From positions 62,001 to 126,000 of IMG/VR virus record IMGVR_UViG_3300032562_000003: a stretch of DNA of 64,000 bases. One strand, written 5' to 3'. Under the pieces are notes generated by a model, which saw only the letters and a program-made list of their open reading frames with translations, was not told the DNA's origin and searched no databases. Positions 12,198 through 53,259 of this stretch are shown here, in pieces. A program made the translations under genes and the position numbers. Each line of letters opens with the position of its first letter. The stretch's first letter is position 1.

Positions 12198-12251
12198 ATT
12201 TTTGCTCTATAAGATAAATACATATGGTGCTTTTTTAAAGGAGAGTCGTAT

Positions 12252-15126: not shown

Positions 15127-15504
15127 TTACTTTGCTTTTAGTTTAGCAACCAAAGCTTTAACTTTGTCTGTTGGGTTTTTTATAAGGTCAAATGCACGCA
15201 TGTCTCTTCGAACAGCAGCCAATTGTACTTTTTCGGTGGGGTTTTTTATATTCTGAATATGGTACGTTTCAGAGTTAATAATTTGTGCTTGTTCGGTTGG
15301 GTTTTGTATAAATCGTATTGCGGACGCCGCATCAGTTACCGCCGCAAGTTGTATTTGGGCTGAAGGATTTGTGATATCCCTTATAAGGAATCCATTTTTA
15401 GAAACTGTTTCAAATTGTACTTTTTCGGTAGGATTTTTTATATATATAAATGCACGTATGTCTCTTCGGACCGCAGCCAGTTGAACCTCTTCTGGTGGAT
15501 TATC
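15127..15504 (-). pseudogene. Frameshifted continuation of the KNP-x4-QLAAV repeats of the upstream ORF
   Basis: The alternate frame reads DNPPEEVQLAAVRRDIRAFIYIKNPTEKVQ...KLKAK* and has no start of its own at the junction. Confidence 0.8.
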
Positions 15505-16513
15505 TATATATGTAGCGTTTCATAGACATCGGATTAGTTTTAACCGCGGCCATCATAACCGCATTACTTGGATTTTTTATATAACGAATAAGGTATCCAT
15601 CAGACTCAACTGCAACTAGTTGCATTTGTTCAGTTGGGTTTTCTATGTATTGAATTATCTCAGGATCGGATGTTATTGCTGCTAATTTAACTGCATTACT
15701 TGGATTTTTTATATATTCTAGAGCTAGCAATGCCGAATCCGTAACTGCTGCTATTTTTTGTTTCTCAGTTGGGTTTTTTATGTATTTTAACATCTCAGCT
15801 GGACGATTGATAAACGCATCATTCCATATCTTTTTAGAAAAATAATGCGAGACTGATCTTACTTGTTCTATACCGAGTTCATTATCAGCCTCATCCATAA
15901 ACTGGGCAGTTTCAAAATGAAACTGCCACTTGTTCGGAAATTTCTTGAATAGAATTATATATATCTTGCCTTTTGTATTATAATGATTGAAATAATTTTC
16001 ACCCTTTGTGGCTGCTGTACACCACCGCGTGCCTCTACCATAATAACATGCTGCTGCCTCATCTTCTGGTATGATTATTCTTACATTATCATCTTCAAAA
16101 TAAAGAGTAGATTTTCCTTTGTTGACCTCCTTCGGATCAGTATTCAATTGTGAATACTTTGACATCATGGTATCTTCAAATTCTTTATATGTTTTAAATT
16201 TGTTGATGTCAGCGTCTTCTGGTTGAATTTGTCTTCTCTTCTTGCCTATATTATATGAACTTAAAACATCCATTCTGTTTAGGTCTTCGAACGGTACTCC
16301 GCCTTTGGCATACATACGAGCCAACCACTGAGTATATTCTTTATTTGGAGTTGGATCCTTAGTCTCTATCTTTTCTAAAATATCAGATGGTGTTATTCCG
16401 GACCTATAGGTCCTATAGGTGTTATCTTCGTACGCAACATGAATGAGCTTATCACCCAAAGTAGCGGCGGTCTTTGTTCTGTCATATTCAATAAGAAATT
16501 CATTTGCTCGCAT
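15500..16513 (-). CDS. PcfJ-like domain protein with DUF4116-like helical repeats
   Basis: DPTPNKEYTQWL, AACYYGRGTRWCTAA and repeated IKNPxxxxxxAAV. Leader MRANEFLIE. Confidence 0.7.
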   Translation of the reverse strand: MRANEFLIEYDRTKTAATLGDKLIHVAYEDNTYRTYRSGITPSDILEKIETKDPTPNKEYTQWLARMYAKGGVPFEDLNRMDVLSSYNIGKKRRQIQPEDADINKFKTYKEFEDTMMSKYSQLNTDPKEVNKGKSTLYFEDDNVRIIIPEDEAAACYYGRGTRWCTAATKGENYFNHYNTKGKIYIILFKKFPNKWQFHFETAQFMDEADNELGIEQVRSVSHYFSKKIWNDAFINRPAEMLKYIKNPTEKQKIAAVTDSALLALEYIKNPSNAVKLAAITSDPEIIQYIENPTEQMQLVAVESDGYLIRYIKNPSNAVMMAAVKTNPMSMKRYIYR

Positions 16514-17886: not shown

Positions 17887-19923
17887 TTACTTTGAAGTTG
17901 CCCTATACACTCCATCCCAGTTAACTGGTGGATTCTTAGCATATTCCTCTATACGGTCAATCATTTCCGTGTAGTACTTGTTTAGCTCTCCGCTCCAGAA
18001 CTTCTTCATATTAGAAGCATATGTTCTAGCAGAGTCCCATTCACCCTTACGATAGCTATCCAAGAATCTCAAGTGTTGTTTTTCTCCCGATGCATCATAT
18101 GAAGATAGGACAGTATAGATGCGAGCCGGTTCAGTTTTTCCTTTGACTGCAATAAGATCAAGTTCTACTACCTGATATTCATCTCTCACGTATTCGGCAG
18201 TTTTTGGTCCGATGATGATTTTGACCCCGTACGGTTTAGATTGACCTTCGAGGCGAGATGCAAGATTGACGCCGTCCCCAAGACAAGTATAGTCAAACCG
18301 CTGAGTGCTACCCATATTACCAACAACCACAGTATCAGTATTAATACCGAGGCCCATTCCAAAAGCCGGGACTCCTTCCAGTGTAATCTCATCGTTAAAT
18401 CTCTCTAATGCCTTCATCATCTCAAACGCCGTCTTGACAGCATCCTTAGCGTGTTGTTGATTACTAAGAGGTGCATTCCAAAATGCCATCTGAGCATCAC
18501 CTATGTACTTATCGAGGGTGCCGTTGTTCTCTAGAATTGCTTTTGTCATCGCAGTCATATAGCGATTCATGATCTTTGTAAGACCTTGAACATCTTTGCC
18601 GTAATGTTCAGAAATAGTAGTAAATCCACGAACATCTGTAAACATAATAGAAAGTTCTCTAGAATCACCTCCAAGTTGTAATAGTTCTGGATTCTTTTGT
18701 AATTTTTCAACCATAGCTGGAGATAGATAAGTTCCAAATTGCTTTTTGATTTGTTGCTTCTGTAAGAATTCTGAGATAAACTTGATTGTATAAATGTGCA
18801 AATAAAGTATCATTGCAATAAGTGCATTAAATGTTACATCTATTAGAATATGATTATGATTAAACATATAAACGGGGAAGTAAAGATAAACACCAATAAG
18901 AGCTATAATCCAAACTACAGAGAATCTTACTTTAGATAACAAAATGATTCCGAGAGCCAATACTACTAAAAGTGCATAATCCAATATTCCAGCCCAGTTT
19001 GGAATAGAAACTGTATCTCCATTAATTAGAGTTTGAAGAAGACTAGCTTGAACTGCTTGTGGAAATTGTGCACCAACTGGAGTAGCTACTGGATTGGCCA
19101 CACCTGAAGCAGTTACACCAAGAATTACAATTTTATTAAGCAAATCTGGAGTTTTGTCTCCAATATCAAATTGAGTAAACTTATAGTTCCAGTTCACAAA
19201 TACTCTAGAGTACTCATCTGTTTTAATAGTATTGAATGATGGAATTCTTAAAGCTTCCACACCAGTCTCGTTAATCTTAGCTTGATAAGATGGATCACCG
19301 GAAATTGCTCTTAACATTTCCATAGAAAAAGATGGATAGTATTCACCTTGAGACATTGATAATAAAGGTACACGGCGAACAACACCATCAGATTCCGGTA
19401 AAGTAGAAGTTACACCAATACCAACAGCAGCATCTTGAAATTCTGAAATATTATTAAGAACTGAAGGATAATTTGGCAAAAACTGTGTAGTTTTACCATC
19501 TCCAATTATAGCCACACCAGTTTTACGAATATTTTGATTTGGCTTAGATTGCGTCGATAGTGTCTGAGATAAAATTATTGGATGCTGTTTTAAAGTAGCA
19601 GTAAGATTTTTGTCTGTATTAAATCTATCTGGTTCAGAAAAGATTATTGTATTTCCAATTACACCAACACGATGTAAATACAAATCGTTGATTATTTTAG
19701 AATAAGTTTCTCTTGGAAAAGGATATTGTCCATATTTCTCTATAGTCTTATCTGATATATTTGCAATTACAATCTGTTCAGACTGTTTTGCTGGACCACG
19801 CATAAGATAATCATAGTATTTTAATTTGATTGCATCTACCAAAAATGGATTGGATATTTTAATAGTAAGTAATAGAGCAAAAGTAATAATCGCAAGCCAA
19901 GGCGATAGAAGAATCTTTTTCAT
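17887..19923 (-). CDS. CHASE2-domain class III adenylate cyclase
   Basis: N-terminal TM, periplasmic CHASE2 (YGQYPFPR, DGVVRRVPL), three TMs, then FTDVRGFT, DKYIGD and GDGVNLASRLEG. Confidence 0.93.
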   Translation of the reverse strand: MKKILLSPWLAIITFALLLTIKISNPFLVDAIKLKYYDYLMRGPAKQSEQIVIANISDKTIEKYGQYPFPRETYSKIINDLYLHRVGVIGNTIIFSEPDRFNTDKNLTATLKQHPIILSQTLSTQSKPNQNIRKTGVAIIGDGKTTQFLPNYPSVLNNISEFQDAAVGIGVTSTLPESDGVVRRVPLLSMSQGEYYPSFSMEMLRAISGDPSYQAKINETGVEALRIPSFNTIKTDEYSRVFVNWNYKFTQFDIGDKTPDLLNKIVILGVTASGVANPVATPVGAQFPQAVQASLLQTLINGDTVSIPNWAGILDYALLVVLALGIILLSKVRFSVVWIIALIGVYLYFPVYMFNHNHILIDVTFNALIAMILYLHIYTIKFISEFLQKQQIKKQFGTYLSPAMVEKLQKNPELLQLGGDSRELSIMFTDVRGFTTISEHYGKDVQGLTKIMNRYMTAMTKAILENNGTLDKYIGDAQMAFWNAPLSNQQHAKDAVKTAFEMMKALERFNDEITLEGVPAFGMGLGINTDTVVVGNMGSTQRFDYTCLGDGVNLASRLEGQSKPYGVKIIIGPKTAEYVRDEYQVVELDLIAVKGKTEPARIYTVLSSYDASGEKQHLRFLDSYRKGEWDSARTYASNMKKFWSGELNKYYTEMIDRIEEYAKNPPVNWDGVYRATSK

Positions 19924-21094: not shown

Positions 21095-21857
21095 TTGTCA
21101 CATTAATAACAGTTTCAGTAGCTCCATATTGTTGTGTAGTAATAGCATTTCCAGTTCCTGTTAGATTTACATATAGACTGTGCCCATATGTGCCACCAAG
21201 GTCTGTTTGTGTAGTATTTAAAGTATTGTAATCACCAGATACTAAGATTGTTTGAGAAGCATTTGGTGAAATTGCAGACATTGTTAATGAGTTATTTCCA
21301 CCAGTAATATCAAGGGTAGTTGTAATATTAGCACCTGCACCATGATAATTTAGAGAATTACTATCACCTGTAAATCTAGCATTAAAGTTTAGACCGGTAC
21401 AACTCGCGTCGCCTAAACTACTTCCACAACGAATTAGAGCATAGTTGCTATTTCCAATTTGTTGAAGAGATAATGAAGCATTATCTGTTCCAGCAGTACC
21501 AGATACAACTGAGATTAGGGCTTCATTATTATTACCAGTTTGAATACCAATAATAGATTGGTTAGCTCCTCTCAAATATACAGGATCTGTAAAAGTACCA
21601 AAGATATTTGTCTGGCCAGTTTGTTTAATATTAATATTAACATTATCACCAGATTGATTAATATAAACATCATTTGTCGTTGACATACTATCAGCATTAT
21701 TTTGATTTGGTGAAGTTGCTATAATAGATGGTGCTGATGGCGCACCAGGTAATGCCGCAGTTGCTGGAGTTGCGGGACCAGTTGGCGATGCAGTTTGAGC
21801 TAATGCTGGTGTAGTAAATAGCATCGCCATTATTGCTAGTGTTTTTAATAGTTTCAT
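21051..21857 (-). CDS. Curlin-like repeat protein
   Basis: Signal peptide, Pro/Ala linker, and repeated QxGxxN (INQSGDN, KQTGQTN, IQTGNNN, QQIGNSN). Confidence 0.75.
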   Translation of the reverse strand: MKLLKTLAIMAMLFTTPALAQTASPTGPATPATAALPGAPSAPSIIATSPNQNNADSMSTTNDVYINQSGDNVNINIKQTGQTNIFGTFTDPVYLRGANQSIIGIQTGNNNEALISVVSGTAGTDNASLSLQQIGNSNYALIRCGSSLGDASCTGLNFNARFTGDSNSLNYHGAGANITTTLDITGGNNSLTMSAISPNASQTILVSGDYNTLNTTQTDLGGTYGHSLYVNLTGTGNAITTQQYGATETVINVTSVGNNGNINIKTGH

Positions 21858-22675
21858 TTGTGTTTCTCCTGTGTGGTTTTATAATGCCATAGCCCTATTT
21901 TTTCACCACTCTTTATTAATTCAACAACACCTGTTTCTATGGCAGATCGAATAGCATAATTTTCCGGCTCATTCTTAGTTTGTTGTGAATCTATTTCAAA
22001 AGCATTAGTTCCCTGATTAAAGAAAGTAAATGCGCTAATGCCTTCAGAAGTAGACAATAGATTCTTTTCTACAGATACTGAAGTAAGTACTTCTCCAGTC
22101 TGTACAGACACCAATCTCATATTAATTGTTACTTGATCTTGGATATACTGCGTGTTTGGTCCAATACCAAGATATCTAGCACCATTTCCTCCAGTTTTTA
22201 TAGAAGAATTATAATCTATAATTGCGCCTTCTAGCAATACTCCTGCAACTAAAAGTGGAGGAAGAGCTTGAGCCTTATCGCCTTGTTCTTGCTCTCTCAT
22301 TTGACGAATAAGTTGGCGCTCTTTTACTAAATCATCTAATCCTACTCTTTCAACTGGCTTAAACCATTTCCCATTTCCAGCTTCATAAAGTGCTTTTACA
22401 ACGTAAGCATCTGCTCCCTGAGTTACTGCGGTAGAAAATGAACTTACAGTTTGAGAAGGTTTTCTTTGACCAGTTTTATCAATAAATGAATATACCGCAA
22501 TTGGAATAGGTGTACCATCTAATTCTGGAATATTATCAAATATATGCGGTTGAGCTGTATGAGTTATCTTTGGTGAATCTTTTTGAAGAAAAGACTGGTT
22601 TAATGCCGGAATAGATCCACCTAAACAGCCAGATAGAAATACACAAAGAAATGGAACTATAATTATTCTCTTCAT
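21854..22675 (-). CDS. csgG: Curli secretion channel CsgG (lipoprotein)
   Basis: Lipobox LSGC; AVYSFIDKTGQRK, FSTAVTQGA, ERVGLDDLVKERQLIR and RLVSVQTGEVL. Confidence 0.92.
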   Translation of the reverse strand: MKRIIIVPFLCVFLSGCLGGSIPALNQSFLQKDSPKITHTAQPHIFDNIPELDGTPIPIAVYSFIDKTGQRKPSQTVSSFSTAVTQGADAYVVKALYEAGNGKWFKPVERVGLDDLVKERQLIRQMREQEQGDKAQALPPLLVAGVLLEGAIIDYNSSIKTGGNGARYLGIGPNTQYIQDQVTINMRLVSVQTGEVLTSVSVEKNLLSTSEGISAFTFFNQGTNAFEIDSQQTKNEPENYAIRSAIETGVVELIKSGEKIGLWHYKTTQEKHK

Positions 22676-23124
22676 CAGAATGCAAACGTTGCTATTGGAA
22701 CAGTAACTATAGTTTGATTTCCATTTGTATCTACAACTGTAAGTGTTACACTGGTTCCAGATTTAACATATGATATTGTATCACCAGACAAATTAAACAT
22801 TCCGGAATTAGAAGAACTAGTTCCAGAGAATAGATTATTTGATAGCTGTGTAGCCAATTGAGAATATACTTGGCTTGTGAACAAAGCTATAAATTTTGCG
22901 GTTGGAGTACTGGCAGCAGCATTTTGTTGAGCTATTATAGAATTTTGTTTTGCGGTAGCTATAGTTTGTTTAGCTGATTCTTCTTGTTGATATGTAGAAG
23001 TAGCAAACGTGCCATAGCTGACCCCATTAAATATAGGATCTTTAAATTGTTGAACTAACTCCGAAGCAAATGCCGAACTACTCAAGCACGATGCAAACAG
23101 AGAAAGTAGTATGATCTTCTTCAT
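22675..23124 (-). CDS. csgF: Curli assembly protein CsgF-like
   Basis: Signal peptide followed by SELVQQFKDPIFNG (CsgF N-terminus pattern), directly upstream of csgG. Confidence 0.8.
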   Translation of the reverse strand: MKKIILLSLFASCLSSSAFASELVQQFKDPIFNGVSYGTFATSTYQQEESAKQTIATAKQNSIIAQQNAAASTPTAKFIALFTSQVYSQLATQLSNNLFSGTSSSNSGMFNLSGDTISYVKSGTSVTLTVVDTNGNQTIVTVPIATFAF

Positions 23125-23174
23125 AATACATATCTCCAAATATACTAACTATCACTATCAGCAGCTTTCTTATC

Positions 23175-23483
23175 TTAGTCGGTCCTGTGATCAGACCTGC
23201 TTAACTGGTTAATTGCTTTTTCTGCTTCTACTCTTCCATACTCGATTGTCTTGCCGCGTAAATGCAACACTGTTTTGACTTTTTGGTTTAGTCTAATTAG
23301 ATCATTATCTAGCATTCTAATACGGTCTATAAGTGCGATCAAAGTTGTATTAGCTTCGCCCAGCACTGGTTTAACTTCTTTAGTAGCCCACTCCCATACA
23401 TAGAATATGAGATATCCCATACCGACCGCTGCTATGATCGGAAAACCGTACTTGTTTACTAGATCAGCTAAGTCAGATCCCAT
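23175..23483 (-). CDS. Small membrane protein (TM plus coiled coil)
   Basis: KYGFPIIAAVGMGYLI and LIDRIRMLDNDLIRL; paralog of the next ORF. Confidence 0.75.
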   Translation of the reverse strand: MGSDLADLVNKYGFPIIAAVGMGYLIFYVWEWATKEVKPVLGEANTTLIALIDRIRMLDNDLIRLNQKVKTVLHLRGKTIEYGRVEAEKAINQLSRSDHRTD

Positions 23484-23764
23484 TAATCTCTCCGTGCATC
23501 TGTTTTACCATCGGCGCGGGCTATTCTATCTATATCTGGTTCTAGCCCTAAAGCGTTAGAAACCATAGTGTCAATACGAATAACATCATGATTCATGGTT
23601 TTTACACGATTGTCAAGCGCCGTGATGATGCCAGCCATACCTTTGATACTACCGGTGACGCCGGCAAGTATGAATTTCAGTGTTAGGAATACGAAGTATC
23701 CTGCACCCATTGCGGCCGCAATAGGAAAACCAACATCAGCAATAAGTTTTAGGAAATTTCCCAT
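23483..23764 (-). CDS. Small membrane protein (TM plus coiled coil)
   Basis: DVGFPIAAAMGAGYFV and LDNRVKTMNHDVIRI; TAATG coupling to the previous ORF. Confidence 0.75.
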   Translation of the reverse strand: MGNFLKLIADVGFPIAAAMGAGYFVFLTLKFILAGVTGSIKGMAGIITALDNRVKTMNHDVIRIDTMVSNALGLEPDIDRIARADGKTDARRD

Positions 23765-23856
23765 CTCTATCTCTTTAAACACGAACATGCCATAGCACAA
23801 CTGTACTATGACACATTAGTATTTAGTCAAAATGGGTAAAAAAATCGCTGTATATA

Positions 23857-24203: not shown

Positions 24204-26474
24204 TTATATTCTTTTAAAAAGAACATCACCCTTAATAGGAGTAATTAACTTGCTTTTATTTTGATTAAGCATCCCTGTTTGAAGATGCTTCACGATTTCA
24301 GGAGTTAAATGTCTAGCACGAAGTTCACCTAATCCAAACATATGAACCTCTACCGGATCGTCACCTTCTAAATCTTGAATAGCCAATATACGGTTACGAC
24401 CTTCGTGTCCTACTATTCTAGCTGACTCGCTGAAATCACCGTCTTCCCATTCAACGGGAAAATCAAAAATTAAAAATGGTGAACCTAATGCTCCGCCGGC
24501 CTGCATATGTTGTTTTATATGCTCTACTGATACTGGTTTATCTAAAGGTAGTGCCAAAGATAAGAATGTGCTAGGACGCATAAGAACACGCATTCCTCTG
24601 TACGCTACATTCGCATTGTATCCAGTAGCACCAAGACCTTCACCATTTATGTCGTTATCAACTTTATACTCGTTTACTGGCGAAGGTGTTGATCTATGAT
24701 TATTAGCTATTACTTGCATAATAGCATTAAATTTGTTTACTCTATCTTCAAGACCATGCAGCCCTGCGTTAATTGGTTTAGTCGCAGCCTGAGTATTGTT
24801 GAAATTAGTAACCTTAGGTGCAACTCTGTTTTGCCAAAACCAAACAGCAACCCTGGCTGCAACGTTTGGTCGTTCAACAAGTTCAGGTTGCTGCTCTAAT
24901 GGTAAACCTAAGGCTTTTCCTACCTTACGGTAATTTTCTCTACCTGTTAATTGAATGAATCCTCGCCCGTGATATCGTGCACCATCTCCTGGATGTGTGT
25001 TACCCAATAGCTTTGCTTTTTCTGGATTATATTTAGGATCATATTTCTTAAAATCTAATTTTCCGCCAAACTCTTTTAGTGACGAAAAATTTTGTGTCTC
25101 ATGTGCGCATTGTGCCAGAAACTGCGCAAGTTCGGTTCCGGTGATGCCAGCTGCCTGTGCTGCTCGTCTAAGTGCTACACCATATGGGTTAGTTAACCCG
25201 GACAGCGTTTGCTTTACTACAGCAGGATCAACCTTAGGTAATTGCACCTGATGTGATACCGGCATGTGTGGCGTAACTGGTTCTACTGTCTTGTTGGGCA
25301 TACCGTGCATACCCAAAGCTAATCCTGCAGCTACGCCCATACCTTTAGCGGCTGATTTCCAGTCTTCGTCTAATTCACTTGTAGAATTATCTTTGACTAG
25401 TGCCTTCTCTAATTTAGGATCAAGGGTAATTGCTAGCTTAACTGTATTAGGATTTGGATTTTTAATAAGTAGAATAGCAGCAGGATATTCGGTGACTGCT
25501 ATTTTTTGTACTTCCAGTGAAGGATTCTTGATGACCTGAATTGCGTCCGGAACTTCAATTACAATATCTCTTAATACCTTTTCATTTGGTTGAGGGTTCA
25601 TGCATCTCAATACAGAAGGACTATATACTGCTGCATCTACTAATAATCGATCCGGTATTTTAGATACATCTACATTATTACTAACTAGTTCTGAGATATA
25701 ATCATATGTATATTTGGTATTATTGATAAAAAGTAGATCCTTTTCTATAGATAAATCACGATCCACGTAGCTTCTCGGGCCGTATAACCAATCCTTTACG
25801 CGAGTTACTGCGCTAGAGTGCGGTACTCTAGCTAATTCAATTTTATCCTTTTTTTGTAAAGCTAGGTTGAGTAATTTTTCTGAAGATAACTTAGTTTCTG
25901 CTGCAAATGAACTGTGAGAAATTTCGTCATCCTCTGCATCAAAATATTGAGTATCCCCGTCGTATTCTGATCCTCGCATAGTGTTGTCAGAAGGCATTAG
26001 GTTGGTTACCGTGTGTGACGCGATTGCCCACTTGGCGCCGGACTGTTTATTGATACAATATATTAAAATAGATTCATCTTGATAGAAGTGTTGTTCAAAA
26101 TGACCTGGAGCACGTTTGGCTGTGCACCAATCAGTATTTTTACCATAGAAACAACTTGCATCTTTATCTAGAGGAACAATGACAAGCCACTTGTCATTGT
26201 CAACCAATGTAATACTTTTTCCAGGAATCTTTCCGCGCTTTAGTTGTCTTTTTGTTCTTGATGGATCGATAGAATTTACAAACTGCGTAAACTCACTAAA
26301 GGACTTCTTTCCCCACCAGTCAATATTTCGCTCAGTGCCACTAACTTGATTTTTGTTGACGAGTTCCTTAAAGGCGGCGATGGCTCTTTGTACATCCTCT
26401 GCAGGTACTCCTGAGTTAATATATTTCTGCGCTACTTCTTTGTAGCCCTCAGCGATGAATTCTGTTACTCGCAT
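24204..26474 (-). CDS. Multidomain protein: PcfJ-like, helical repeats, GH19 lysozyme-like and ParB-like
   Basis: SCFYGKNTDWCTA; KNP repeats; AQFLAQCAHET...YHGRGFIQLTGRENY; C-terminal IVGHEGRNR. Confidence 0.8.
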   Translation of the reverse strand: MRVTEFIAEGYKEVAQKYINSGVPAEDVQRAIAAFKELVNKNQVSGTERNIDWWGKKSFSEFTQFVNSIDPSRTKRQLKRGKIPGKSITLVDNDKWLVIVPLDKDASCFYGKNTDWCTAKRAPGHFEQHFYQDESILIYCINKQSGAKWAIASHTVTNLMPSDNTMRGSEYDGDTQYFDAEDDEISHSSFAAETKLSSEKLLNLALQKKDKIELARVPHSSAVTRVKDWLYGPRSYVDRDLSIEKDLLFINNTKYTYDYISELVSNNVDVSKIPDRLLVDAAVYSPSVLRCMNPQPNEKVLRDIVIEVPDAIQVIKNPSLEVQKIAVTEYPAAILLIKNPNPNTVKLAITLDPKLEKALVKDNSTSELDEDWKSAAKGMGVAAGLALGMHGMPNKTVEPVTPHMPVSHQVQLPKVDPAVVKQTLSGLTNPYGVALRRAAQAAGITGTELAQFLAQCAHETQNFSSLKEFGGKLDFKKYDPKYNPEKAKLLGNTHPGDGARYHGRGFIQLTGRENYRKVGKALGLPLEQQPELVERPNVAARVAVWFWQNRVAPKVTNFNNTQAATKPINAGLHGLEDRVNKFNAIMQVIANNHRSTPSPVNEYKVDNDINGEGLGATGYNANVAYRGMRVLMRPSTFLSLALPLDKPVSVEHIKQHMQAGGALGSPFLIFDFPVEWEDGDFSESARIVGHEGRNRILAIQDLEGDDPVEVHMFGLGELRARHLTPEIVKHLQTGMLNQNKSKLITPIKGDVLFKRI

Positions 26475-26477
26475 TTA

Positions 26478-27458
26478 TTAAGCCAATTCGGGTTGTTCAG
26501 GATTTTCTTTGGGTTCTGATGCAAATGCTGTTGGGAAATCACGTTTTATTCGACCTACTTCTTCTGCGATGTTCCACCCACCGTGTGTAATTCCCATATC
26601 CTTAGAGGCTTGTTTGAGGTCTTCTGAATGTTTTTCTAAAGCACTAACAATTTGCTTCATCAATCCCGGAAATAATTCAGCAAATTCAGCATCATTACGG
26701 TGCGGATAGCCTCTGTTATTTTGGTTTGCATCTACTAGCTGATTAGTCTGAGAATGCATTTGCCACTTTCCCTTAGGGTCATTCATGTTTTTCTTATCGA
26801 TGATACTCACAATCGGACCGTCTTTAGAATATCGGTTGAACCAACGTTCACCGTCACTGCTACCAGTACAGAATGATGCCTGAACACCCTCTTCATTGTT
26901 GAATGTATAGCAAGAACCGTAATTCAATGGTACCATGACAAAAAAGCGGTCGTCATTAATCAAAATGATTTCCTTTTTGTCTCGCTTCATCTTTGCAATA
27001 CGCTCAGCATCTTTAATTCTGGCCAATGCGTCTCTGTATTCTCTGCTACGAACTACATTATATAATTGTTCTAAAGAACGAAATCTATTAAAGTCTTGAT
27101 GTTCTGGGCGAAGGAGATTACGAATACTAAGTGCCTTCCATTGACCAAGAGCAGGTACTCCTTCACCTGATATATCTTCATAATCAGCAACGTGATTCAT
27201 ATATAGTCTAAGCAACCACTGATCAAACTTACCATCTCTGGATAGATCACCATATTCAGAATTGGCCAAAGCATTGTCTACCATATTAGCCCAAAGTAGT
27301 GCGATGTCATGGTCAGATGCGTTTGGGCCAATCGACGCCCTTTTTGCAGCAGGAAAGGTATGATCATGGCGAAGAGCCAATGCGATCATTTTTTCTGTTT
27401 TTGGATCATTTGCTATTTTAGCAGCTATAGTCTCAGTGAGATTTACTCTAGTTTTCAT
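26478..27458 (-). CDS. PcfJ-like domain protein (divergent)
   Basis: VPLNYGSCYTF...SFCTGS...KWQMH, homologous to the domain in 15500, 24204 and 30087. Confidence 0.6.
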   Translation of the reverse strand: MKTRVNLTETIAAKIANDPKTEKMIALALRHDHTFPAAKRASIGPNASDHDIALLWANMVDNALANSEYGDLSRDGKFDQWLLRLYMNHVADYEDISGEGVPALGQWKALSIRNLLRPEHQDFNRFRSLEQLYNVVRSREYRDALARIKDAERIAKMKRDKKEIILINDDRFFVMVPLNYGSCYTFNNEEGVQASFCTGSSDGERWFNRYSKDGPIVSIIDKKNMNDPKGKWQMHSQTNQLVDANQNNRGYPHRNDAEFAELFPGLMKQIVSALEKHSEDLKQASKDMGITHGGWNIAEEVGRIKRDFPTAFASEPKENPEQPELA

Positions 27459-27463
27459 GATTT

Positions 27464-28501
27464 TTATACGTGCACCAATTCTTGCTTGAGGAAGGCCATC
27501 ACAGTTGATAACTTTTTAGTATCCCCGTTGATGATATCAGCAATAACCTTATTTGGACCGGCTGAATAAGCAGAACTAGCATTTGATAGCATTACTATAT
27601 AATGATCGCGGGGACCACCGCCGCGACTAATGTTTCCGGTTTCTTCAGGATAATAATAACCTGCTGCCATCAATATAGCTAAATTTAGCGTCTGATTAAG
27701 CACAGGCGGCAAAGCCTGTACTGACTTTGCTTGTTCCAGAGTGTCGTACAATTCTTGTAGACGCTTTGCTACTTGTAACTTTTTCTTGGCTCTATCGAAT
27801 GCGTCATTCTTAATAGAAATACCAACGGCTCCTTTAACGTCCGCTAATGCTTGTTGAACATATTTTCCTAACAGAGGACGTAACTTAGCCAATAGTACCT
27901 GTCTATTATGCGATGACCCGCGGTTTATATCATACATATTAGGAATAGTTAGGGCCTTTGCTTCTCTGCGTTTTGTGCGAAGTTGATCTACTGAAGTTTC
28001 AGATCCATGTGCAGCACTGTGATAAGCGCCAGGTCCACGAACACGATACGTTTTAGGATTAATCCAAAATCCAGTTATTTTACCGATATTAGATTTAATT
28101 TGGCTAGCTGCTGCGTTTATACTAGTAATTCTATCAGTCTGTATACCTTCACTATTCGCAGTTACCAAATAATAATGTCCACTTGCCCATTTTACAGCAG
28201 CGGTTCCTTTAGTACCTGCCATAAGAACAAAATTAGGTGCATAATCCTTAACATCAGTCCAACTAATAGAATCTACCGGAGCCCATTCTTGATTATGAGG
28301 CAATGATAAGCTACTGTGAATTGTCTTTATGAGTTGATCAGCATATGGGCTGTTTCTAACTGCGGACATTGCAGTAGATGCCTCAGAAAGAATCTCTGAT
28401 AGGAAATGTCCTACAGATTCAGTCAACTCGTTTGCCGGTTTTTTAGCTGAACCAATCATTGGTTTAGATACATTTTCGGATAGAAATTCTGTAACTCTCA
28501 T
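27464..28501 (-). CDS. Hypothetical protein with CTS-like leader
   Basis: Start reassigned to MRVTEFLSE at 28501. Confidence 0.7.
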   Translation of the reverse strand: MRVTEFLSENVSKPMIGSAKKPANELTESVGHFLSEILSEASTAMSAVRNSPYADQLIKTIHSSLSLPHNQEWAPVDSISWTDVKDYAPNFVLMAGTKGTAAVKWASGHYYLVTANSEGIQTDRITSINAAASQIKSNIGKITGFWINPKTYRVRGPGAYHSAAHGSETSVDQLRTKRREAKALTIPNMYDINRGSSHNRQVLLAKLRPLLGKYVQQALADVKGAVGISIKNDAFDRAKKKLQVAKRLQELYDTLEQAKSVQALPPVLNQTLNLAILMAAGYYYPEETGNISRGGGPRDHYIVMLSNASSAYSAGPNKVIADIINGDTKKLSTVMAFLKQELVHV

Positions 28502-28503
28502 AA

Positions 28504-28947
28504 TTATGCCCTTGAAATTTTTAGTATGGAACGAAGCATCCATTGATGTTTACCGTGGGCGTCAATTCTCTCCGCGATAAAGTTAGCAATACCTTGCTCA
28601 TCTGCATCTTCTGCTACGTGAAATGCTGCCTTATACATCGCAAGCATTTTGGCATTATCTTCAAAAAGTTCTTTCATCATTAATTCGGCGCGGGGAACTT
28701 TAGTTTGGTCTGCGATTTGACTAAGTTCTGAAAAACGAATGAGACTGCCCGGAGTGTATTCATCAACTTGACGAATTATTTCTGCCAGTCTATCAATCGT
28801 ATTGTCATACACTTCTTCATAGTAGTTACCGAAAAATTCATGGTATTGGGGAAAATCCGGAGTTTCTACATTCCAGTGAAAGAATTGAGCTTTGATCGAT
28901 AGTGCATACGCGGATGCCAATAGTGTCTTAAGAGTATCTGCTAACAT
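28504..28947 (-). CDS. dps: Dps/ferritin-like protein
   Basis: FHWNVE..F..HEFF...Y, IDRLAEIIR and HGKHQWMLRS. Confidence 0.9.
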   Translation of the reverse strand: MLADTLKTLLASAYALSIKAQFFHWNVETPDFPQYHEFFGNYYEEVYDNTIDRLAEIIRQVDEYTPGSLIRFSELSQIADQTKVPRAELMMKELFEDNAKMLAMYKAAFHVAEDADEQGIANFIAERIDAHGKHQWMLRSILKISRA

Positions 28948-28968
28948 GTTTGTAATCCTATAGACTAT

Positions 28969-30090
28969 TTATGCTTCTTGACTCACATCCACGTACTTAA
29001 TTGGTTTCCTATTTAATATCGCTGCTAATGCACGATGATGCCCGTCGACTACAATTCCGTCGTTCATGACAATAATACTATTTGATAAATTAGGATCTGA
29101 TCTATATGAATCTACAATATCTTCTTGATCAGAATCTAGCATGTCATAAATTTCATCGATATGATCTACGCCATATTGACTTTTAAATAGTAGTTCCAGT
29201 TTAACTGGTGAAATAGTTTGAACTGTAAAAGGTACATTAAAGTCTGAGTCACCTACAAAATTCCAAATCATCTCATCGTGATCTGGGAGACCCTTACTAT
29301 ACAACTGTTTCAATGTAATCTTATTTTCTGATGAAAAATCCTCATATGTCATAGCAGTAATACGATGAGGTCCTTTGGTTTTGAATTGACCATACTCTTG
29401 TTCATATGTAGTTGGACCCCCGACCATCGATCCGCCGCCTATCCCGGCCGAACCTCCGCCCTGACCAGTACTGATGGTTTCTCTCAGCTTCTCAACATCA
29501 GCAATAGGATCAGTGATAACAGGAATGTCACCTTTTCTCCAAAGTATGTTACTTATACCTACATCTATTACAACGGTTCCACCTGCTGCACTTCTAATAA
29601 AATCCAAAACTGGTTTTAGTTGAGGGAATTCTTCAAAAAGTGTAGTTTCTTCTGCGTATGGGCGCCGCGGATATACCTCTAAATATTCTTGTATCTGATA
29701 TCTAATATTTTTTCTCTCTAAAGTGAATAGATTTTTGTTATCCAACAACTCCATTCGCATTAGATTAAATCTGCGCAATAACTTTACTGGGCGGCCAATA
29801 ATCTTTGGAACATGTGGGTTAGATTGATTCTGTAACACAAAAGAAAGATAGGTGTCATATGCAGGATCATCTTTCCAAAGCTTGATGATACTGTCTTCGC
29901 CGGGACGCTTGAATGCTGTGCCGAAACAACCTGAGCCTAATACGTATTGCTGATATCCTGCCAGTTTTAAGGCATCCAAAAATTCTTCCATATTTCTGCT
30001 GTTCTGCAACAGAGAATACACTGGATCTTTCTTATAACCAGTTAACTCGTTGAGCGGTTCATTTTCAGAGATGAATTCTCGGGCTCTCAT
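28969..30090 (-). CDS. Protein-kinase-like domain fused to a ParB-like domain
   Basis: LGSGCFGTAF, IIKLW, PHVPKI, RMELL, DVGISNI and ITDP; C-terminal VVDGHHRALAA. Confidence 0.75.
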   Translation of the reverse strand: MRAREFISENEPLNELTGYKKDPVYSLLQNSRNMEEFLDALKLAGYQQYVLGSGCFGTAFKRPGEDSIIKLWKDDPAYDTYLSFVLQNQSNPHVPKIIGRPVKLLRRFNLMRMELLDNKNLFTLERKNIRYQIQEYLEVYPRRPYAEETTLFEEFPQLKPVLDFIRSAAGGTVVIDVGISNILWRKGDIPVITDPIADVEKLRETISTGQGGGSAGIGGGSMVGGPTTYEQEYGQFKTKGPHRITAMTYEDFSSENKITLKQLYSKGLPDHDEMIWNFVGDSDFNVPFTVQTISPVKLELLFKSQYGVDHIDEIYDMLDSDQEDIVDSYRSDPNLSNSIIVMNDGIVVDGHHRALAAILNRKPIKYVDVSQEA

Positions 30091-31376
30091 TTGTTTCTTT
30101 CGATCAAATCTACGTCCCAGCTACCATCTTTCTTTTTTTGTACAAGAACGTTCTTTACCAAATATTTAGCAATACCAGTGTCATGTAGTCGGCTACCTCT
30201 AAAATGGTTTAACAACATGTCTGATATTATGCTTGGTGTGTCATCTATTCCGACACCGACATAATCACCTTCTTGTGTCATCTCTTGCGTGCAGGCCTTC
30301 AGATGACGCGGTGATGGTGTAACTATGCTTTCAATATTATCCACCCATTCTTTAGCATCTGGATTCCAAGACATATAATCGTTACCTGCTGCATATGCTG
30401 CGTCCCAATCAATATCTCCGTCCTCATCGCCATAAAGTTCTCTCATGTCTCGATAATAATAATCGTCATTCTGTTCCCATTCCGCAATTTCTTCGTATGC
30501 CTTATCCATAGCTATTTGACTAATTTTAGTAATAACCGAAGTCAGAACGTCGTCATCTGCAAATAATATGCTGTTTTTAATTGCTGGTTCATTTTCTCTA
30601 AAGAATGAGGACAAATCTCCAAATCTTTTGGTAATTAATTCCTCTACGTTTACTGGAGAATCGGCTTCATCCATGAATGAACCGGTTTGAAAATGTATTT
30701 GGTATTTTTCACCGTCGCGTTTAGGATGTTTTGGTATCAAGATATACAATTTACCTTGACTACTATAATTTTTGAAGTAGTTCGTTCCTTTAGTTGCAGC
30801 AGTACACCAGCGGGTGCCTCTTCCATAGTAACATGCAGCGGCTTCGTCCTCAGGAACAATTATGCGTACTTGTTCATTGTCAAATATTGTGTTAGCCTGA
30901 CCCTTTTCTTTAGCTTTTGCAGAATCCGCACCTTCAATCTGATCTAAATCATAATTACTCAGCATAGTATCTTCAAATTCTTTGTAGTTTTTGAATCGAT
31001 TAATATCAGCATGTTCTGGTTTAATCATCCTGCGTTTCTTACCTAAATTGTAGATACCAAGTAGATTTCCTCTGTTTAAGTCCTCTAACTTCACTCCACC
31101 TTTAGCATACATTCTAGCAAGCCACTGAGTGTATTCTTTATTTGGTGTTGGATCTTTTTCTTCTATAGCCTGCAATATGTGTTGAATTATGTCGGCTTTG
31201 TCGGCCTCAGTAGCCTTATTACCAGGTACTAGAACTTCTCTAGCGAATTGCCTGTATACCATCATATTACCACTAATGGCGCCCATATCCTTAGCAAATG
31301 CAGGAATGAGACCAGTACCTAGTGTCTGTGCGGTTTTGTTTCTATCATATTCAATTAGAAACTCTATGGCTCGCAT
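30087..31376 (-). CDS. PcfJ-like domain protein, close paralog of 15500-16513
   Basis: Shares DPTPNKEYTQWLARMYAKGG and EDEAAACYYGRGTRWCTAATKG, with a different acidic C-terminus. Confidence 0.75.
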   Translation of the reverse strand: MRAIEFLIEYDRNKTAQTLGTGLIPAFAKDMGAISGNMMVYRQFAREVLVPGNKATEADKADIIQHILQAIEEKDPTPNKEYTQWLARMYAKGGVKLEDLNRGNLLGIYNLGKKRRMIKPEHADINRFKNYKEFEDTMLSNYDLDQIEGADSAKAKEKGQANTIFDNEQVRIIVPEDEAAACYYGRGTRWCTAATKGTNYFKNYSSQGKLYILIPKHPKRDGEKYQIHFQTGSFMDEADSPVNVEELITKRFGDLSSFFRENEPAIKNSILFADDDVLTSVITKISQIAMDKAYEEIAEWEQNDDYYYRDMRELYGDEDGDIDWDAAYAAGNDYMSWNPDAKEWVDNIESIVTPSPRHLKACTQEMTQEGDYVGVGIDDTPSIISDMLLNHFRGSRLHDTGIAKYLVKNVLVQKKKDGSWDVDLIERNK

Positions 31377-34496: not shown

Positions 34497-35191
34497 TCAA
34501 GTTGTCGGTTTGTATTTGCATCGGTCAAAGTGCCATACCTTTATGCCGCCGGCACCTCCTGTTTTCCCACAATATGGACAGGTTACGATTTCGTGTTTTT
34601 TAATAGATTTCCCCAGACGAGTTGCGGATCGTTTGGCGATTGCCTCTGCGGATTTATTCACGCCGCGCTGCCAGTCCCCCAATTTAGGGTAGGTTTTTCC
34701 CTTACGAGTTTTGGTTCTTTTTGAAATAGACTCCGCTGATTTAGGTACTCCGATGAGTGCAGCACTAACTTTAAGATTTGGTTTCCCCTTTAGTCTATCA
34801 GACACATCTGGGCGCGACTTTCCAGTAAGAGCATCACTTCGTTTTTTATTAGATGAAGCGGATTGAACCATTCCCGACACGCCCTCGTCGCCGTCAGTTC
34901 TATTGTGTAATATTCCCCAAGATATTTTATCTTTACGACCATACCACCTAATATACCTGCGTTCTAAAGCGAAAGCACCAACCTCAGTAAGATTTGTTTC
35001 CATAATAATGATTCTAGAATTGGGAGGGACGTGTACCCCTTCCATTTCCCACTATTTGCGTCTTTGTATCGGTGACCTGTCCAGGCTCTACCGTCTTGTC
35101 CTTTGCCTATATAATAAGGGGTTCCACTAGTTCGCACATACGCATAGATATAGAAACCAATTGGTAGATTGTCTGTAGAATAAATATTCAT
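34497..35191 (-). pseudogene. GIY-YIG-like homing endonuclease with NUMOD3-like tail, broken by a -1 frameshift near 35037
   Basis: FYIYAYVRTSGTPYYIGKG...GKWKG joins [18 protein letters not shown]...LHNRTDG if one G is added to aagggg. Confidence 0.85.
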
Positions 35192-52635: not shown

Positions 52636-53259
52636 TTAGCTCAATGCAGCAATAGCAAGTTCATAGTTATGTTTTCTATCTTCTAATCCGATGGTTCCAC
52701 CATTTATTCGTCTAGTTAAGCCCACAAAATCTTCTGTGTCTGCATATATACTTAGCTTGTTAACGTCCCAAAACCAACCCGCACTTGCTGTTGCACCTTC
52801 TGGTGTTTCTAAGTATGCGACCGTTTCGTCAAGTGTTTTACCAATTGATGCTGCAAACTTAGTATAATTCTGTCTTCCGGTTAACTGAATTAGGCCCCGT
52901 CCGCAGAATTTATATCCATCACCGGATGCTTCGTTTCCATTACCCATACGATTGGCATATACTTTGCTTGCAATCTTTTGTGCATTACGTTCATATGGTT
53001 TAGCGGAATCTACCGTAGGGAAATACTTTTTAAAGACTTCATTCAGAGAAATTGCTGAGTAGCTCAATCCTTCTTTGATGGAGTTGAACCCACCAGATTC
53101 ATGTGCTACTTGTGCCAAAAAGGCCGCCATTCTTTTTGGATTATCAAACAATCCAAAATGATGACCTACCGTATTTAGAGGGTCAAAAAATTTAGCCAAA
53201 ACAGTAGATTTTGTATTTGGACAAATTTTCTGTAATAACTCTAGTGTAACTTCGCTCAT
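52636..53259 (-). CDS. GH19 lysozyme (endolysin or tail lysozyme)
   Basis: AAFLAQVAHESGGF, GRGLIQLTGRQNY and RRINGG..GL.DR. Confidence 0.92.
   Translation of the reverse strand: MSEVTLELLQKICPNTKSTVLAKFFDPLNTVGHHFGLFDNPKRMAAFLAQVAHESGGFNSIKEGLSYSAISLNEVFKKYFPTVDSAKPYERNAQKIASKVYANRMGNGNEASGDGYKFCGRGLIQLTGRQNYTKFAASIGKTLDETVAYLETPEGATASAGWFWDVNKLSIYADTEDFVGLTRRINGGTIGLEDRKHNYELAIAALS

What the first reader, a model, noticed from the sequence alone, without database searches (positions are those of the whole stretch)
24204..26474. Four-module polyprotein containing a second GH19 lysozyme
Seen in order: leader, PcfJ-like domain, helical repeats, ELDE, Gly/Ala hydrophobic helix, GH19, PVNE, ParB-like domain. 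A stand-alone GH19 already exists at 52636. Established: T4 gp21 cleaves at (I/L)xE. Inference: the prohead protease releases several effectors, including a membrane-anchored muralytic enzyme that could aid genome entry.
Basis: partly seen in the sequence, partly recalled or inferred. Interest (0 to 1): 0.65.

Follow-up and report, generated by a model that had tools for sequence, protein, structure and literature searches.

The report
Capsid-targeted modular lysozyme polyprotein of jumbo phage
A 756-residue gene of a freshwater jumbo phage strings three protein modules (one a cell-wall-cutting enzyme) behind a T4-like "pack me into the head" tag. Each module is preceded by the short motif that the phage's own head protease is known to cut in T4, so it is most likely a cargo polyprotein cut up inside the capsid and injected with the DNA.

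Summary
The ORF (24204..26474, minus strand, 756 aa) is real, and every listed sequence feature is present in the stated order. GH19 is solid: Pfam E 5e-13, and both catalytic Glu are invariant in 120 of 120 relatives. The C-terminal domain is a divergent ParB/Srx fold. The "PcfJ-like" label is not supported.

The protein starts MRVTEFIAE, which shares EFIAE with the T4 IPII/IPIII capsid-targeting sequence MKTYQEFIAE. Eight genes of this phage start this way. The genome encodes a T4 gp21-type prohead protease within a T4-order head module.

Relatives form a large mosaic family:
- More than 1,100 proteins carry the GH19 module.
- The ParB/Srx-like module falls into 806 clusters.
- Modules occur alone, shuffled, or fused to other enzymes.
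- About 70% of distinct N-termini carry the leader.
- An aliphatic-x-Glu motif sits at the module seams: 69 of 78 for the GH19 module and 66 of 87 for the ParB/Srx-like module.
- When the ParB/Srx-like module is N-terminal, the leader's IxE falls in the same register as the seam.

I read the protein as a head-packaged polyprotein cut by the prohead protease (confidence 0.55). Packaging, cleavage and the entry role of the weakly hydrophobic GH19 product are inferred, not shown. It is a new variant of known kinds: T4 internal proteins and polyvalent proteins.

The parts
24204..26474 (-). Whole ORF, 756 aa (P0001), plus stop codon
   Evidence: The identical protein occurs on two other IMG/VR contigs.
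26448..26474 (-). Leader, aa 1-9 (MRVTEFIAE). A capsid-targeting-sequence-like propeptide ending in I-A-E; the predicted cut is after E9.
   Evidence: T4 IPIII/IPII start MKTYQEFIAE. Eight such gene starts in this genome against 0 in the control. 181 of 255 distinct N-termini in the family follow the pattern.
25860..26447 (-). Module A, part 1: a phage-specific alpha/beta domain, aa 10-205. Invariant residues are P101, C108, G111, C117 and T118. Function unknown.
   Evidence: Alignment; AF2 model; no PDB or Pfam match. Hits phrog_17056 and phrog_28193.
25383..25826 (-). Module A, part 2: ARM/HEAT-like helical repeats resembling DUF4116, aa 217-364.
25365..25373 (-). Seam 1: L368-D369-E370. The predicted prohead-protease cut is after E370.
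   Evidence: pLDDT below 50 at aa 364-370. Across the family, P1 is Glu in 77 of 78 distinct seams and [LIVMF]xE occurs in 69 of 78; P1' is G or D and P2' is W.
25299..25352 (-). Module B, part 1: Gly/Ala-rich, weakly hydrophobic segment with GxxxG spacing, aa 375-392.
   Evidence: In the family the N-flank has net charge -2.9 and the C-flank +0.2.
25167..25298 (-). Module B, part 2: flexible tether, aa 393-436.
   Evidence: Length varies from 30 to 72 aa and the composition is A/Q/K/P-rich across the family.
24699..25166 (-). Module B, part 3: GH19 muramidase/chitinase-fold domain, aa 437-592, with catalytic E459 and E468.
   Evidence: PF00182 E 5e-13. PDB GH19 endolysins match at E down to 1e-26. 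E459, E468 and the GRG..IQLT motif are invariant in 120 of 120 relatives.
24669..24677 (-). Seam 2: V600-N601-E602. The predicted cut is after E602.
   Evidence: Low pLDDT at the start of the C-domain model. In the family, [LIVMF]xE precedes this domain at 66 of 87 internal seams and 31 of 45 N-terminal ones, where the leader sits in the same register.
24207..24668 (-). Module C: ParB/Srx-fold domain, aa 603-756, with the invariant motif G-H-E-G-R-[NH]-R.
27464..28501 (-). Neighbouring leader-bearing gene (MRVTEFLSE...), 345 aa, function unknown.
28969..30090 (-). Neighbouring leader-bearing gene (MRAREFISE...), 373 aa. It has a kinase-like N-terminal part and a C-terminal DGHHR ParB-like motif.
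30087..31376 (-). Leader-bearing paralog of module A (MRAIEFLIE...), 429 aa.
15500..16513 (-). Leader-bearing paralog of module A with DUF4116-like repeats (MRANEFLIE...), 337 aa.
26478..27458 (-). Paralog of the module A core without the canonical leader (starts MKTRVNLTE), 326 aa.
52636..53259 (-). Stand-alone GH19, 207 aa, with no leader and no hydrophobic segment. It lies among tail-fibre-like genes and is the candidate ordinary endolysin.

Best explanation
P0001 is most likely a head-packaged cargo polyprotein of a T4-like-headed jumbo phage from lakes.

Proposed mechanism:
1. The 9-residue leader (MRVTEFIAE) acts like the T4 capsid-targeting sequence and brings the precursor into the scaffolding core of the prohead.
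2. The phage's gp21-type serine protease (Peptidase_S77) then cuts after Glu in aliphatic-x-Glu motifs at E9, E370 and E602.
3. This releases three proteins inside the head:
   - A ~41 kDa protein of unknown function: an alpha/beta domain with two invariant Cys, plus ARM-like repeats.
   - A ~25 kDa basic GH19 muramidase. Its new N-terminus (DWK...) leads straight into a weakly hydrophobic Gly/Ala segment and a flexible tether.
   - A ~17 kDa ParB/Srx-fold protein, probably NTP-binding and possibly a nuclease.
4. All three are ejected with the DNA.

The GH19 product would open peptidoglycan locally, with its hydrophobic tip engaging a membrane. The other two products would act in the cytoplasm.

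Shown here: the domain architecture, the leader, the protease gene, seam conservation, module shuffling and intact GH19 catalytic residues. Inferred: packaging, cleavage, ejection and all biochemical activities.
For: 1. Leader resembles the T4 targeting tag. It shares EFIAE with the T4 IPIII/IPII capsid-targeting sequence read from NC_000866. In T4 the first 10 residues suffice for head targeting, and gp21 cuts after Glu in L/I-x-E (PMC9026906).

2. The leader is selected as a peptide. Eight gene starts in this genome match the strict pattern and none match the reversed control. The codons differ synonymously (AGA/CGA, GAA/GAG, TTC/TTT).

3. The protease and head module are present. The genome has a Peptidase_S77 gene (E 3.7e-26) in the order portal, protease, scaffold, major capsid protein. 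The capsid protein has a gp23-like propeptide ending L-A-E.

4. Both seams fall at domain borders in disordered stretches. Only 6 [LI]xE motifs exist in the whole protein.

5. The family is mosaic. The GH19 module is fused to GNAT, deaminase, amidoligase, NT5C, LysM, DUF4116 or nothing. The C-domain occurs at any position in proteins of 150-1800 aa. Module order is permuted in P0015 and P0016, and each module keeps its own seam.

6. Seam statistics:
   - GH19 seam: P1 is Glu in 77 of 78; [LIVMF]xE in 69 of 78.
   - C-domain seam: [LIVMF]xE in 66 of 87 internal cases.
   - Where the C-domain is N-terminal, the leader's IxE lies in the same register in 31 of 45.

7. The minimal 225-260 aa genes consist of leader, a spacer of 0-12 residues, LxE|GW, the hydrophobic segment and GH19. 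53 of 59 distinct N-termini fit this.

8. Every complete genome checked that carries a family member has S77: two complete IMG/VR genomes (517 and 361 kb) and the cultured Ralstonia phage RsoM2USA. In RsoM2USA the C-domain gene starts MQTFKQFLSE and lies about 4 kb from the protease gene.

9. The locus is a cluster of leader-bearing genes, like the T4 internal-protein loci. It is syntenic with a relative that also has a ferritin gene nearby.
Against: - There are no virion, expression or cleavage data for this phage or any relative.
- The seam motif could be conserved simply as part of each module's own fold or N-cap.
- Seam 2 in this protein has Val at P3. T4 gp21 is described as L/I-x-E, and the specificity of this protease is unknown.
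- The leader is 9 residues rather than 10, and positions 2-4 differ from T4.
- The complex prediction of the protease with seam 1 gave no answer.
- The hydrophobic segment is below the usual transmembrane threshold.
- The phage already has two other muralytic genes, so a need for GH19 at entry is not evident.
- No T4-type late-promoter motif is enriched in the window.
Confidence: 0.55

Rival explanations
1. An uncut, or only leader-trimmed, multidomain virion protein: a classical 'polyvalent protein'. It is packaged and ejected as a single chain. The aliphatic-x-Glu motifs at the seams are conserved module N-caps or relics of former leaders, not functional cleavage sites.
For: Polyvalent proteins with lysozyme plus ParB-type domains are known and thought to be head-packaged (PMC5512222). 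N4 vRNAP is packaged unprocessed (same paper). The seam motif always travels with its module, so homology alone could explain its conservation. At least one protein (P0175) keeps a whole internal leader, which suggests seams arise by fusion of leader-bearing genes.
Against: P1 Glu and P3 aliphatic stay fixed while P2 and P4 vary freely, which is the pattern of a protease site. The seams lie in disordered linkers outside the folded cores. The minimal GH19 genes keep both the leader and the seam only 0-12 residues apart, which makes sense as a redundant propeptide.
Confidence: 0.2
2. A lysis enzyme exported by the host Sec system. The Gly/Ala segment would be a signal-anchor or SAR-type domain that places GH19 in the periplasm late in infection, and the protein would not be in the capsid.
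For: The segment is Gly/Ala-rich and weakly hydrophobic, like SAR domains. In many short relatives it is followed by A-x-A-like stretches (ADA|K, AQA|A) that resemble signal-peptidase sites. PHROG labels the GH19 part 'endolysin'.
Against: In P0001 the segment is 375 residues from the N-terminus. A ParB/Srx domain would have to be exported with GH19. The N-flank is strongly acidic (mean net charge -2.9; 51 of 56 negative) and the C-flank is neutral to positive, the reverse of Sec/SAR signals under the positive-inside rule. The same leader heads many proteins with no hydrophobic segment. A plain stand-alone GH19 is available for lysis.
Confidence: 0.12
3. A tail or baseplate structural lysin. 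The N-terminal domain and repeats would dock the protein onto the tail, and GH19 would act from outside at adsorption. The leader would be unrelated to head targeting.
For: Phage lysozyme domains are common in tail and baseplate proteins (PMC5512222). A BFVD hit of the repeat region to a PA5oct 'structural protein' (E 2.6e-5, TM 0.21) suggests that virion association is possible.
Against: The gene is not among tail genes; it sits in a cluster of leader-bearing genes of mixed enzymatic content. The variable N-terminal partners (GNAT, deaminase, NT5C) are not tail-like. A separate 1060-aa lysozyme-bearing protein lies next to the portal gene.
Confidence: 0.08

Closest known systems
T4 internal proteins (IPI, IPII, IPIII, Alt) with capsid-targeting sequences, processed by gp21
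   Same: A short N-terminal propeptide (MKTYQEFIAE in T4, MRVTEFIAE here) ends in I-A-E. The genome has a gp21-family protease. The leader-bearing genes are clustered, hypervariable and of diverse function. By inference they are delivered with the DNA.
   Different: The T4 internal proteins are small single-domain proteins cut once (Alt at both ends). This is a 756-aa chain of three unrelated modules with internal seams, one module being a muralytic enzyme with a hydrophobic segment. There is no sequence similarity to the mature parts of T4 internal proteins. The host and phage lineage differ: a freshwater jumbo phage whose cyclase gene has relatives in Pelagibacter and Methylophilales phages.
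Polyvalent proteins of phages and conjugative elements (Iyer et al. 2017, PMC5512222)
   Same: Several unrelated effector domains sit in one polypeptide that is predicted to be head-packaged. Fusions of lysozyme with ParB-superfamily domains are explicitly described there.
   Different: There, processing is ascribed to an embedded zincin metallopeptidase; none is present here (Pfam and PHROG scans). Here the seams carry the prohead-protease motif and the chain starts with a CTS-like leader. The ParB-fold module is not detectably the DdrB-like family (hhalign 0.5%). The lysozyme is GH19.
Ejection / inner-body proteins of phiKZ-like giant phages (phiKZ, 201phi2-1, SPN3US)
   Same: Many head proteins are cut after Glu at a short motif by a diverged gp21 homolog, with redundant sites in the propeptides, and are ejected into the cell (PMC9026906; abstracts).
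   Different: The motif differs, since the phiKZ and SPN3US sites have their own logos. No homology to those proteins was found. The present family is modular and shuffled, with one constant GH19 module.
T7 gp16 and other internal-core or ejection proteins with muralytic domains
   Same: A peptidoglycan-cleaving domain is carried inside the capsid and used at entry (my own knowledge of T7 gp16). PHROG has an 'internal virion lysozyme motif' family.
   Different: T7 gp16 carries a lytic transglycosylase in a podovirus core protein and is not protease-released. Here the enzyme is GH19 in a T4-type-head jumbo phage and is predicted to be freed by maturation cleavage.
SAR endolysins
   Same: A Gly/Ala-rich, weakly hydrophobic segment lies directly upstream of a muralytic domain.
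   Different: The segment is internal, has an acidic rather than basic N-flank, and would become N-terminal only after the predicted cleavage.

Membership tests
T4-type CTS-bearing internal (ejection) proteins | N-terminal propeptide of about 10-19 residues resembling MKTYQEFIAE and ending in L/I-x-E | tested here: met
   MRVTEFIAE against the T4 IPIII/IPII N-termini read from NC_000866. Criteria taken from PMC9026906.
T4-type CTS-bearing internal (ejection) proteins | The phage encodes a gp21-family (Peptidase_S77) prohead protease and a T4-like head module | tested here: met
   PF03420 E 3.7e-26, 89 bits. Portal, protease, scaffold and capsid protein lie in that order.
T4-type CTS-bearing internal (ejection) proteins | The protein is present in the mature head and is cleaved after the Glu of the motif | not testable with these tools
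   No virion proteome exists. The protease/seam complex job gave no verdict.
Polyvalent proteins (Iyer et al. 2017) | Two or more unrelated effector domains in one phage-encoded polypeptide, including lysozyme and ParB-type domains | tested here: met
   GH19, a ParB/Srx-fold domain and an unrelated N-terminal module.
Polyvalent proteins (Iyer et al. 2017) | An embedded zincin-like metallopeptidase (or MuF/portal linkage) for processing or packaging | tested here: not met
   No peptidase family appears in the Pfam, PHROG or NCBIfam scans.
DdrB-like ParB domain | Profile similarity to the phage P1 DdrB N-terminal ParB domain | tested here: not met
   hhalign of A3 against P1 DdrB gives probability 0.5%. 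The template was a single sequence, so this is a weak test.
Glycoside hydrolase family 19 | Pfam PF00182 above the gathering score | tested here: met
   49.8 bits against 25.5, E 5e-13, aa 446-589. PDB GH19 endolysins match at E down to 1e-26.
Glycoside hydrolase family 19 | Catalytic Glu pair and the GRG-x-IQLT signature | tested here: met
   E459 and E468 are invariant in 120 of 120 relatives; G503, R504, Q508 and N514 are invariant or nearly so.
Glycoside hydrolase family 19 | Muralytic or chitinolytic activity | not testable with these tools
   Needs a zymogram or turbidity assay.
ParB/Srx superfamily | ParB/Srx alpha+beta fold | tested here: inconclusive
ParB/Srx superfamily | A conserved Arg-containing motif in the nucleotide pocket (GxxRxxA / DGxHR type) | tested here: inconclusive
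   H95, G97, R98 and R100 of G-H-E-G-R-[NH]-R are invariant in 54 sequences. Equivalence to the ParB box was judged by eye, not by superposition. PF02195 did not hit.
PcfJ-like (PF14284) | A match to the Pfam model or to the PcfJ protein of pCF10 | tested here: not met
   No hit at E <= 10 in the genome. hhalign gives probability 0.5%. No structural support. Only an embedding lead of 0.89.
SAR / signal-anchored endolysins | An N-terminal weakly hydrophobic domain with a basic n-region that directs Sec export | tested here: not met
   The segment is at aa 375-392, not at the N-terminus. The N-flank net charge averages -2.9 in 56 short relatives.
DUF4116 (PF13475) repeats | A Pfam match in the repeat region | tested here: inconclusive
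   P0001 itself has no hit at E < 0.1. Relatives P0065 and P0143 and paralog 15500..16513 do hit. The fold is ARM-like.

The most novel reading that the evidence does not exclude
The leader plus aliphatic-x-Glu seams may define a plug-and-play capsid-delivery system in environmental jumbo phages with T4-type heads.
- Any enzyme placed between the leader and a seam would be packaged, cut free by the prohead protease and injected.
- The constant GH19 module would acquire its hydrophobic N-terminus only by that cleavage. It would then be a proteolytically armed entry factor, or translocon, that accompanies variable anti-host cargo such as GNAT, deaminase, nucleotidase, amidoligase and ParB/Srx domains.

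If true, this would be a previously undescribed, very large repertoire of injected effectors: more than 1,100 GH19-module proteins and about 800 clusters of the ParB/Srx-like module.
Probability: 0.3. Interest if true: 0.8.

Novelty: new variant of a known kind. Interest (0 to 1): 0.6.

Why it matters
If the reading holds, T4's capsid-targeting and gp21-cleavage logic is not a peculiarity of the T-even internal proteins. It would be the grammar of a huge, shuffled family of injected proteins in uncultured freshwater and marine jumbo phages.

That would give three practical gains:
- A sequence rule (leader plus seam) for predicting which phage genes encode injected early effectors and where their mature ends lie.
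- A set of naturally validated cargo slots for protein delivery by phage heads.
- A new case of a muralytic enzyme that is armed by maturation cleavage.

It also assigns a likely context to two widespread domains of unknown function: the Cys-containing N-domain and a new ParB/Srx-fold family.

Tried and rejected
- Near-identical DNA in the cultured-phage collection: none found.
- NCBIfam scan: nothing.
- Foldseek and VIA-align of the N-terminal model against the PDB: only generic helical-repeat matches. The Atlas fold search gave only viral hypothetical clusters.
- PcfJ was tested three ways and rejected as unsupported (plus the fold searches). A literature search for 'PcfJ' returned only C. 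elegans pCFJ plasmids.
- hhalign of the C-domain against P1 DdrB: no relation.
- Profile search of the C-domain against PDB sequences: only a chance hit at E 0.08.
- T4 late-promoter motif TATAAATA: 1 match against 6.5 expected, so it is not informative.
- Internal full-length leader relics: 6 found against 2.8 expected in shuffles. This is not a general pattern; only P0175 is a clear case.
- Complex prediction of the S77 protease with seam 1 (aa 352-400): no answer, score 0.01. This is not evidence either way (two earlier attempts found the machine busy).
- The look-up of encoding contigs for P0006 returned the gene order but no DNA.
Full report
**Context.** The window is bases 62001-126000 of a 258,859-bp IMG/VR viral contig judged about 73% complete. 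Its DNA occurs in freshwater and lake metagenomes. The genome has the hallmarks of a jumbo phage with a T4-type head. Just downstream of the window lie, in order, a portal gene, a small acidic protein, a Peptidase_S77 (gp21-type) prohead protease (PF03420, E 3.7e-26), a scaffold-like protein and a gp23-like major capsid protein. The capsid protein's N-terminal propeptide ends in L-A-E just before a gp23*-like mature start. The closest cultured relatives of one neighbouring gene are Methylophilales phage Melnitz and Pelagibacter phage HTVC008M.

**Observation.** ORF 24204..26474 (minus strand, 756 aa, P0001) is exactly as described.
- Pfam finds GH19 at aa 446-589, with 49.8 bits against a cut-off of 25.5.
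- PHROGs places aa 3-355 in two families of unknown function and the GH19 part in 'endolysin' families.
- An AF2 model of aa 1-370 (pLDDT 85.7) shows an N-terminal helical bundle, an alpha/beta core, then ARM-like repeats at aa 217-364. Disordered stretches lie at aa 1-6 and 364-370.
- The invariant motif G-H-E-G-R-[NH]-R fits the Arg-rich nucleotide box of that superfamily.

So 'ParB-like' is supported at fold level, as a new family without a Pfam model.

**The 'PcfJ-like' label is not supported.** The PF14284 HMM finds nothing in the genome at E <= 10. hhalign against pCF10 PcfJ gives 0.5%. No fold search points to it. Only a language-model neighbour at 0.89 hints at it. The domain has invariant P101, C108, G111, C117 and T118 and three paralogs in the window.

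**The stand-alone GH19.** The gene at 52636..53259 exists. It is 33% identical to the internal copy, has neither leader nor hydrophobic segment, and sits among tail-fibre-like genes.

**The leader.** P0001 starts MRVTEFIAE. T4 IPIII and IPII, read from NC_000866, start MKTYQEFIAE. In T4 these ten residues are the capsid-targeting sequence, and gp21 cuts after Glu in L/I-x-E (PMC9026906).
- Eight genes of this genome begin M-R-[AV]-x-E-F-[IL]-x-E. Five are in the window, four of them in one minus-strand cluster from 24204 to 31376.
- A degenerate DNA pattern for this peptide hits those eight starts and nothing in the reversed control.
- The codons vary synonymously, so it is the peptide that is conserved.
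- Looser variants head an NT5C nucleotidase and an Fe/Mn superoxide dismutase elsewhere in the genome.

**The family.** Searches with the whole protein and with its parts reveal a very large, mostly metagenomic, mosaic family.
- The hydrophobic-segment-plus-GH19 module occurs in more than 1,100 proteins. It stands either alone or behind variable N-terminal modules: GNAT acetyltransferases, cytidine deaminase, amidoligase, NT5C, LysM, DUF4116 repeats and others.
- The C-terminal domain occurs in 806 representative clusters, at the start, middle or end of proteins of 150-1800 aa, and also alone.
- The N-domain likewise occurs alone behind the leader.
- In P0015 and P0016 the module order is reversed, with the ParB/Srx-like module before GH19.
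- Of 255 distinct N-termini collected, 181 fit M-[RK]-x-x-[EDQ]-[FLIMV].

**The seams.** The whole protein contains only six [LI]xE motifs.
- At the seam in front of the GH19 module, P1 is Glu in 77 of 78 distinct sequences and P3 is aliphatic in 69 of 78. P2 and P4 vary. P1' is G or D and P2' is W.
- In front of the ParB/Srx-like module, [LIVMF]xE is present at 66 of 87 internal seams.
- Most tellingly, when that module is the first in a protein, the leader is joined to it so that the leader's own I/L-x-E occupies the same position as the internal seam motif, in 31 of 45 cases. Examples are MRATEFITE|VTIDN and ...PLDE|VTIDN.
- The minimal 225-260-aa GH19 genes read: leader, a spacer of 0-12 residues, L-[DE]-E|[GD]-W, hydrophobic segment, tether, GH19 (53 of 59 distinct N-termini). 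That looks like a propeptide with two redundant cleavage sites, as described for phiKZ.
- The permuted proteins keep each module's own seam.

**Association with the protease.** Both complete IMG/VR genomes that carry the ParB/Srx-like module (517 and 361 kb) encode S77. So does the cultured 344-kb Ralstonia phage RsoM2USA. There the stand-alone module starts MQTFKQFLSE and lies about 4 kb from the protease gene. The other contigs are fragments of 12-77% estimated completeness, so absence of S77 from them means little.

**Mechanism proposed.** The leader targets the precursor to the prohead core. The S77 protease then cuts after E9, E370 and E602, giving products of about 41, 25 (pI 9.8) and 17 kDa. 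All three products are ejected with the DNA.

The GH19 module is very probably active: E459, E468 and the GRG..IQLT signature are invariant in 120 of 120 relatives. After cleavage it would begin with D-W-K followed by a Gly/Ala-rich segment with GxxxG spacing and a 30-72-residue A/Q/K/P-rich tether.

The segment is too weakly hydrophobic to call a transmembrane helix. 'Membrane-anchored' is therefore an inference. A membrane-engaging tip, or an interaction within the ejection channel, fits equally well.

Functions for the other two products are guesses from fold only. The ParB/Srx-like module may be an NTP-dependent nuclease or NTPase. The first module may be a Cys-dependent enzyme or binding module carried on ARM-like repeats.

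**Rivals.**
1. The chain is packaged uncut, and the seams are merely module N-caps or relics of former leaders. One protein, P0175, does keep an entire internal leader, but such relics are not enriched. The P1/P3-only conservation and the disordered context favour real sites.
2. Sec-exported lysin. The Gly/Ala segment and A-x-A-like stretches in some relatives recall signal or SAR sequences. However, the N-flank is strongly acidic (mean -2.9, negative in 51 of 56), the segment is internal in P0001, a ParB/Srx domain would have to be exported too, and the same leader heads many proteins with no hydrophobic segment.
3. A tail-associated lysin. The gene context and the fusion partners argue against this, and a 1060-aa protein with a T4-lysozyme domain next to the portal gene is the better tail-lysozyme candidate.

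**Relation to known systems.** The thing works like the T4 internal proteins (CTS plus gp21 cleavage) and like the 'polyvalent proteins' of Iyer et al. 2017, which include lysozyme-ParB fusions thought to be injected. It differs from both.
- Unlike the T4 internal proteins, it is a multi-module chain with internal seams and a muralytic module.
- Unlike polyvalent proteins, it has no embedded metallopeptidase, and its ParB-fold module is not detectably DdrB-like. The seams instead match the head protease's motif.

In the literature held here I found no description of this leader-and-seam grammar or of the GH19 family. That is absence within a limited library, not proof of novelty.

**Limits.** Everything about packaging, cleavage, ejection and activity is inferred from sequence comparison.

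Noticed in passing
window 21854-23139 (-): The phage encodes the curli secretion components CsgG (PF03783, E 7e-52, with a lipoprotein-like N-terminus) and CsgF (PF10614, E 3e-13), immediately downstream of the polyprotein cluster. From memory, similar genes were reported in Melnitz and HTVC008M.
   Followed up: partly
window 23175-23483 and 23483-23800 (-): Two small paralogous proteins (102 and 105 aa), each with one N-terminal hydrophobic helix and a coiled-coil-like tail, lie between csgF and the target gene. They look like holins or membrane proteins but have no Pfam hit.
   Followed up: partly
window 28504-28947 (-): A ferritin/Dps-like gene (PF00210, E 5e-21) is embedded in the cluster of leader-bearing genes. 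A ferritin gene is also near the P0006 homolog on an ENA contig.
   Followed up: partly
window 17887-19923 (-): A CHASE2 sensor domain fused to an adenylate/guanylate cyclase domain (PF05226 and PF00211). It is 38-40% identical to genes of the Melnitz and HTVC008M phages.
   Followed up: partly
window 10953-14791: The family-B DNA polymerase is split into two minus-strand ORFs (13112-14791 and 10953-12197). They are separated by a plus-strand ORF, 12252-13151, with weak similarity to the PvuRts1I-like N-terminal domain.
   Followed up: partly
window 28969-30090 (-): Another leader-bearing two-module protein. It has a protein-kinase-like N-terminal part (phrog_15752, E 1e-6), a Gly-rich linker and a C-terminal classical DGHHR ParB-like motif.
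   Followed up: partly
window 39818-42082 (-): A full-length ClpA/ClpB-type double-AAA+ chaperone (Clp_N, AAA, AAA_2 and ClpB_D2-small domains; phrog_4871, E 3e-237).
   Followed up: no
L003:9416-12475 (genome 133415-136474, outside the window): The portal gene is 1019 aa and carries an HNH-endonuclease-like insert (phrog_7545, aa 468-555). This may be an intein or a homing-element insertion.
   Followed up: no
L003:12508-15690 (genome 136507-139689, outside the window): A 1060-aa protein with a T4-lysozyme-type domain (PF00959, E 1e-16, aa 824-946) lies next to the portal gene. It is the third muralytic gene of this phage and a likely tail or baseplate lysozyme.
   Followed up: partly
L089:3456-4010 and L089:5140-5694 (genome ~24.4-26.7 kb): An Fe/Mn superoxide dismutase (starts MREYITILED) and an NT5C nucleotidase (starts MKIIELIES) have leader-like N-termini. 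NT5C is fused to the GH19 module in other phages.
   Followed up: partly
window 53461-55521 (-): A 686-aa protein made of long internal repeats rich in G, N, A and V (GNANVGNLGFGSG...), probably a fibre. It lies next to the stand-alone GH19.
   Followed up: no
window 34497-35045 (-) and L003:2505-3284: Homing-endonuclease-like genes (phrog_655) are scattered in the region, one of them directly beside the major capsid protein gene.
   Followed up: no
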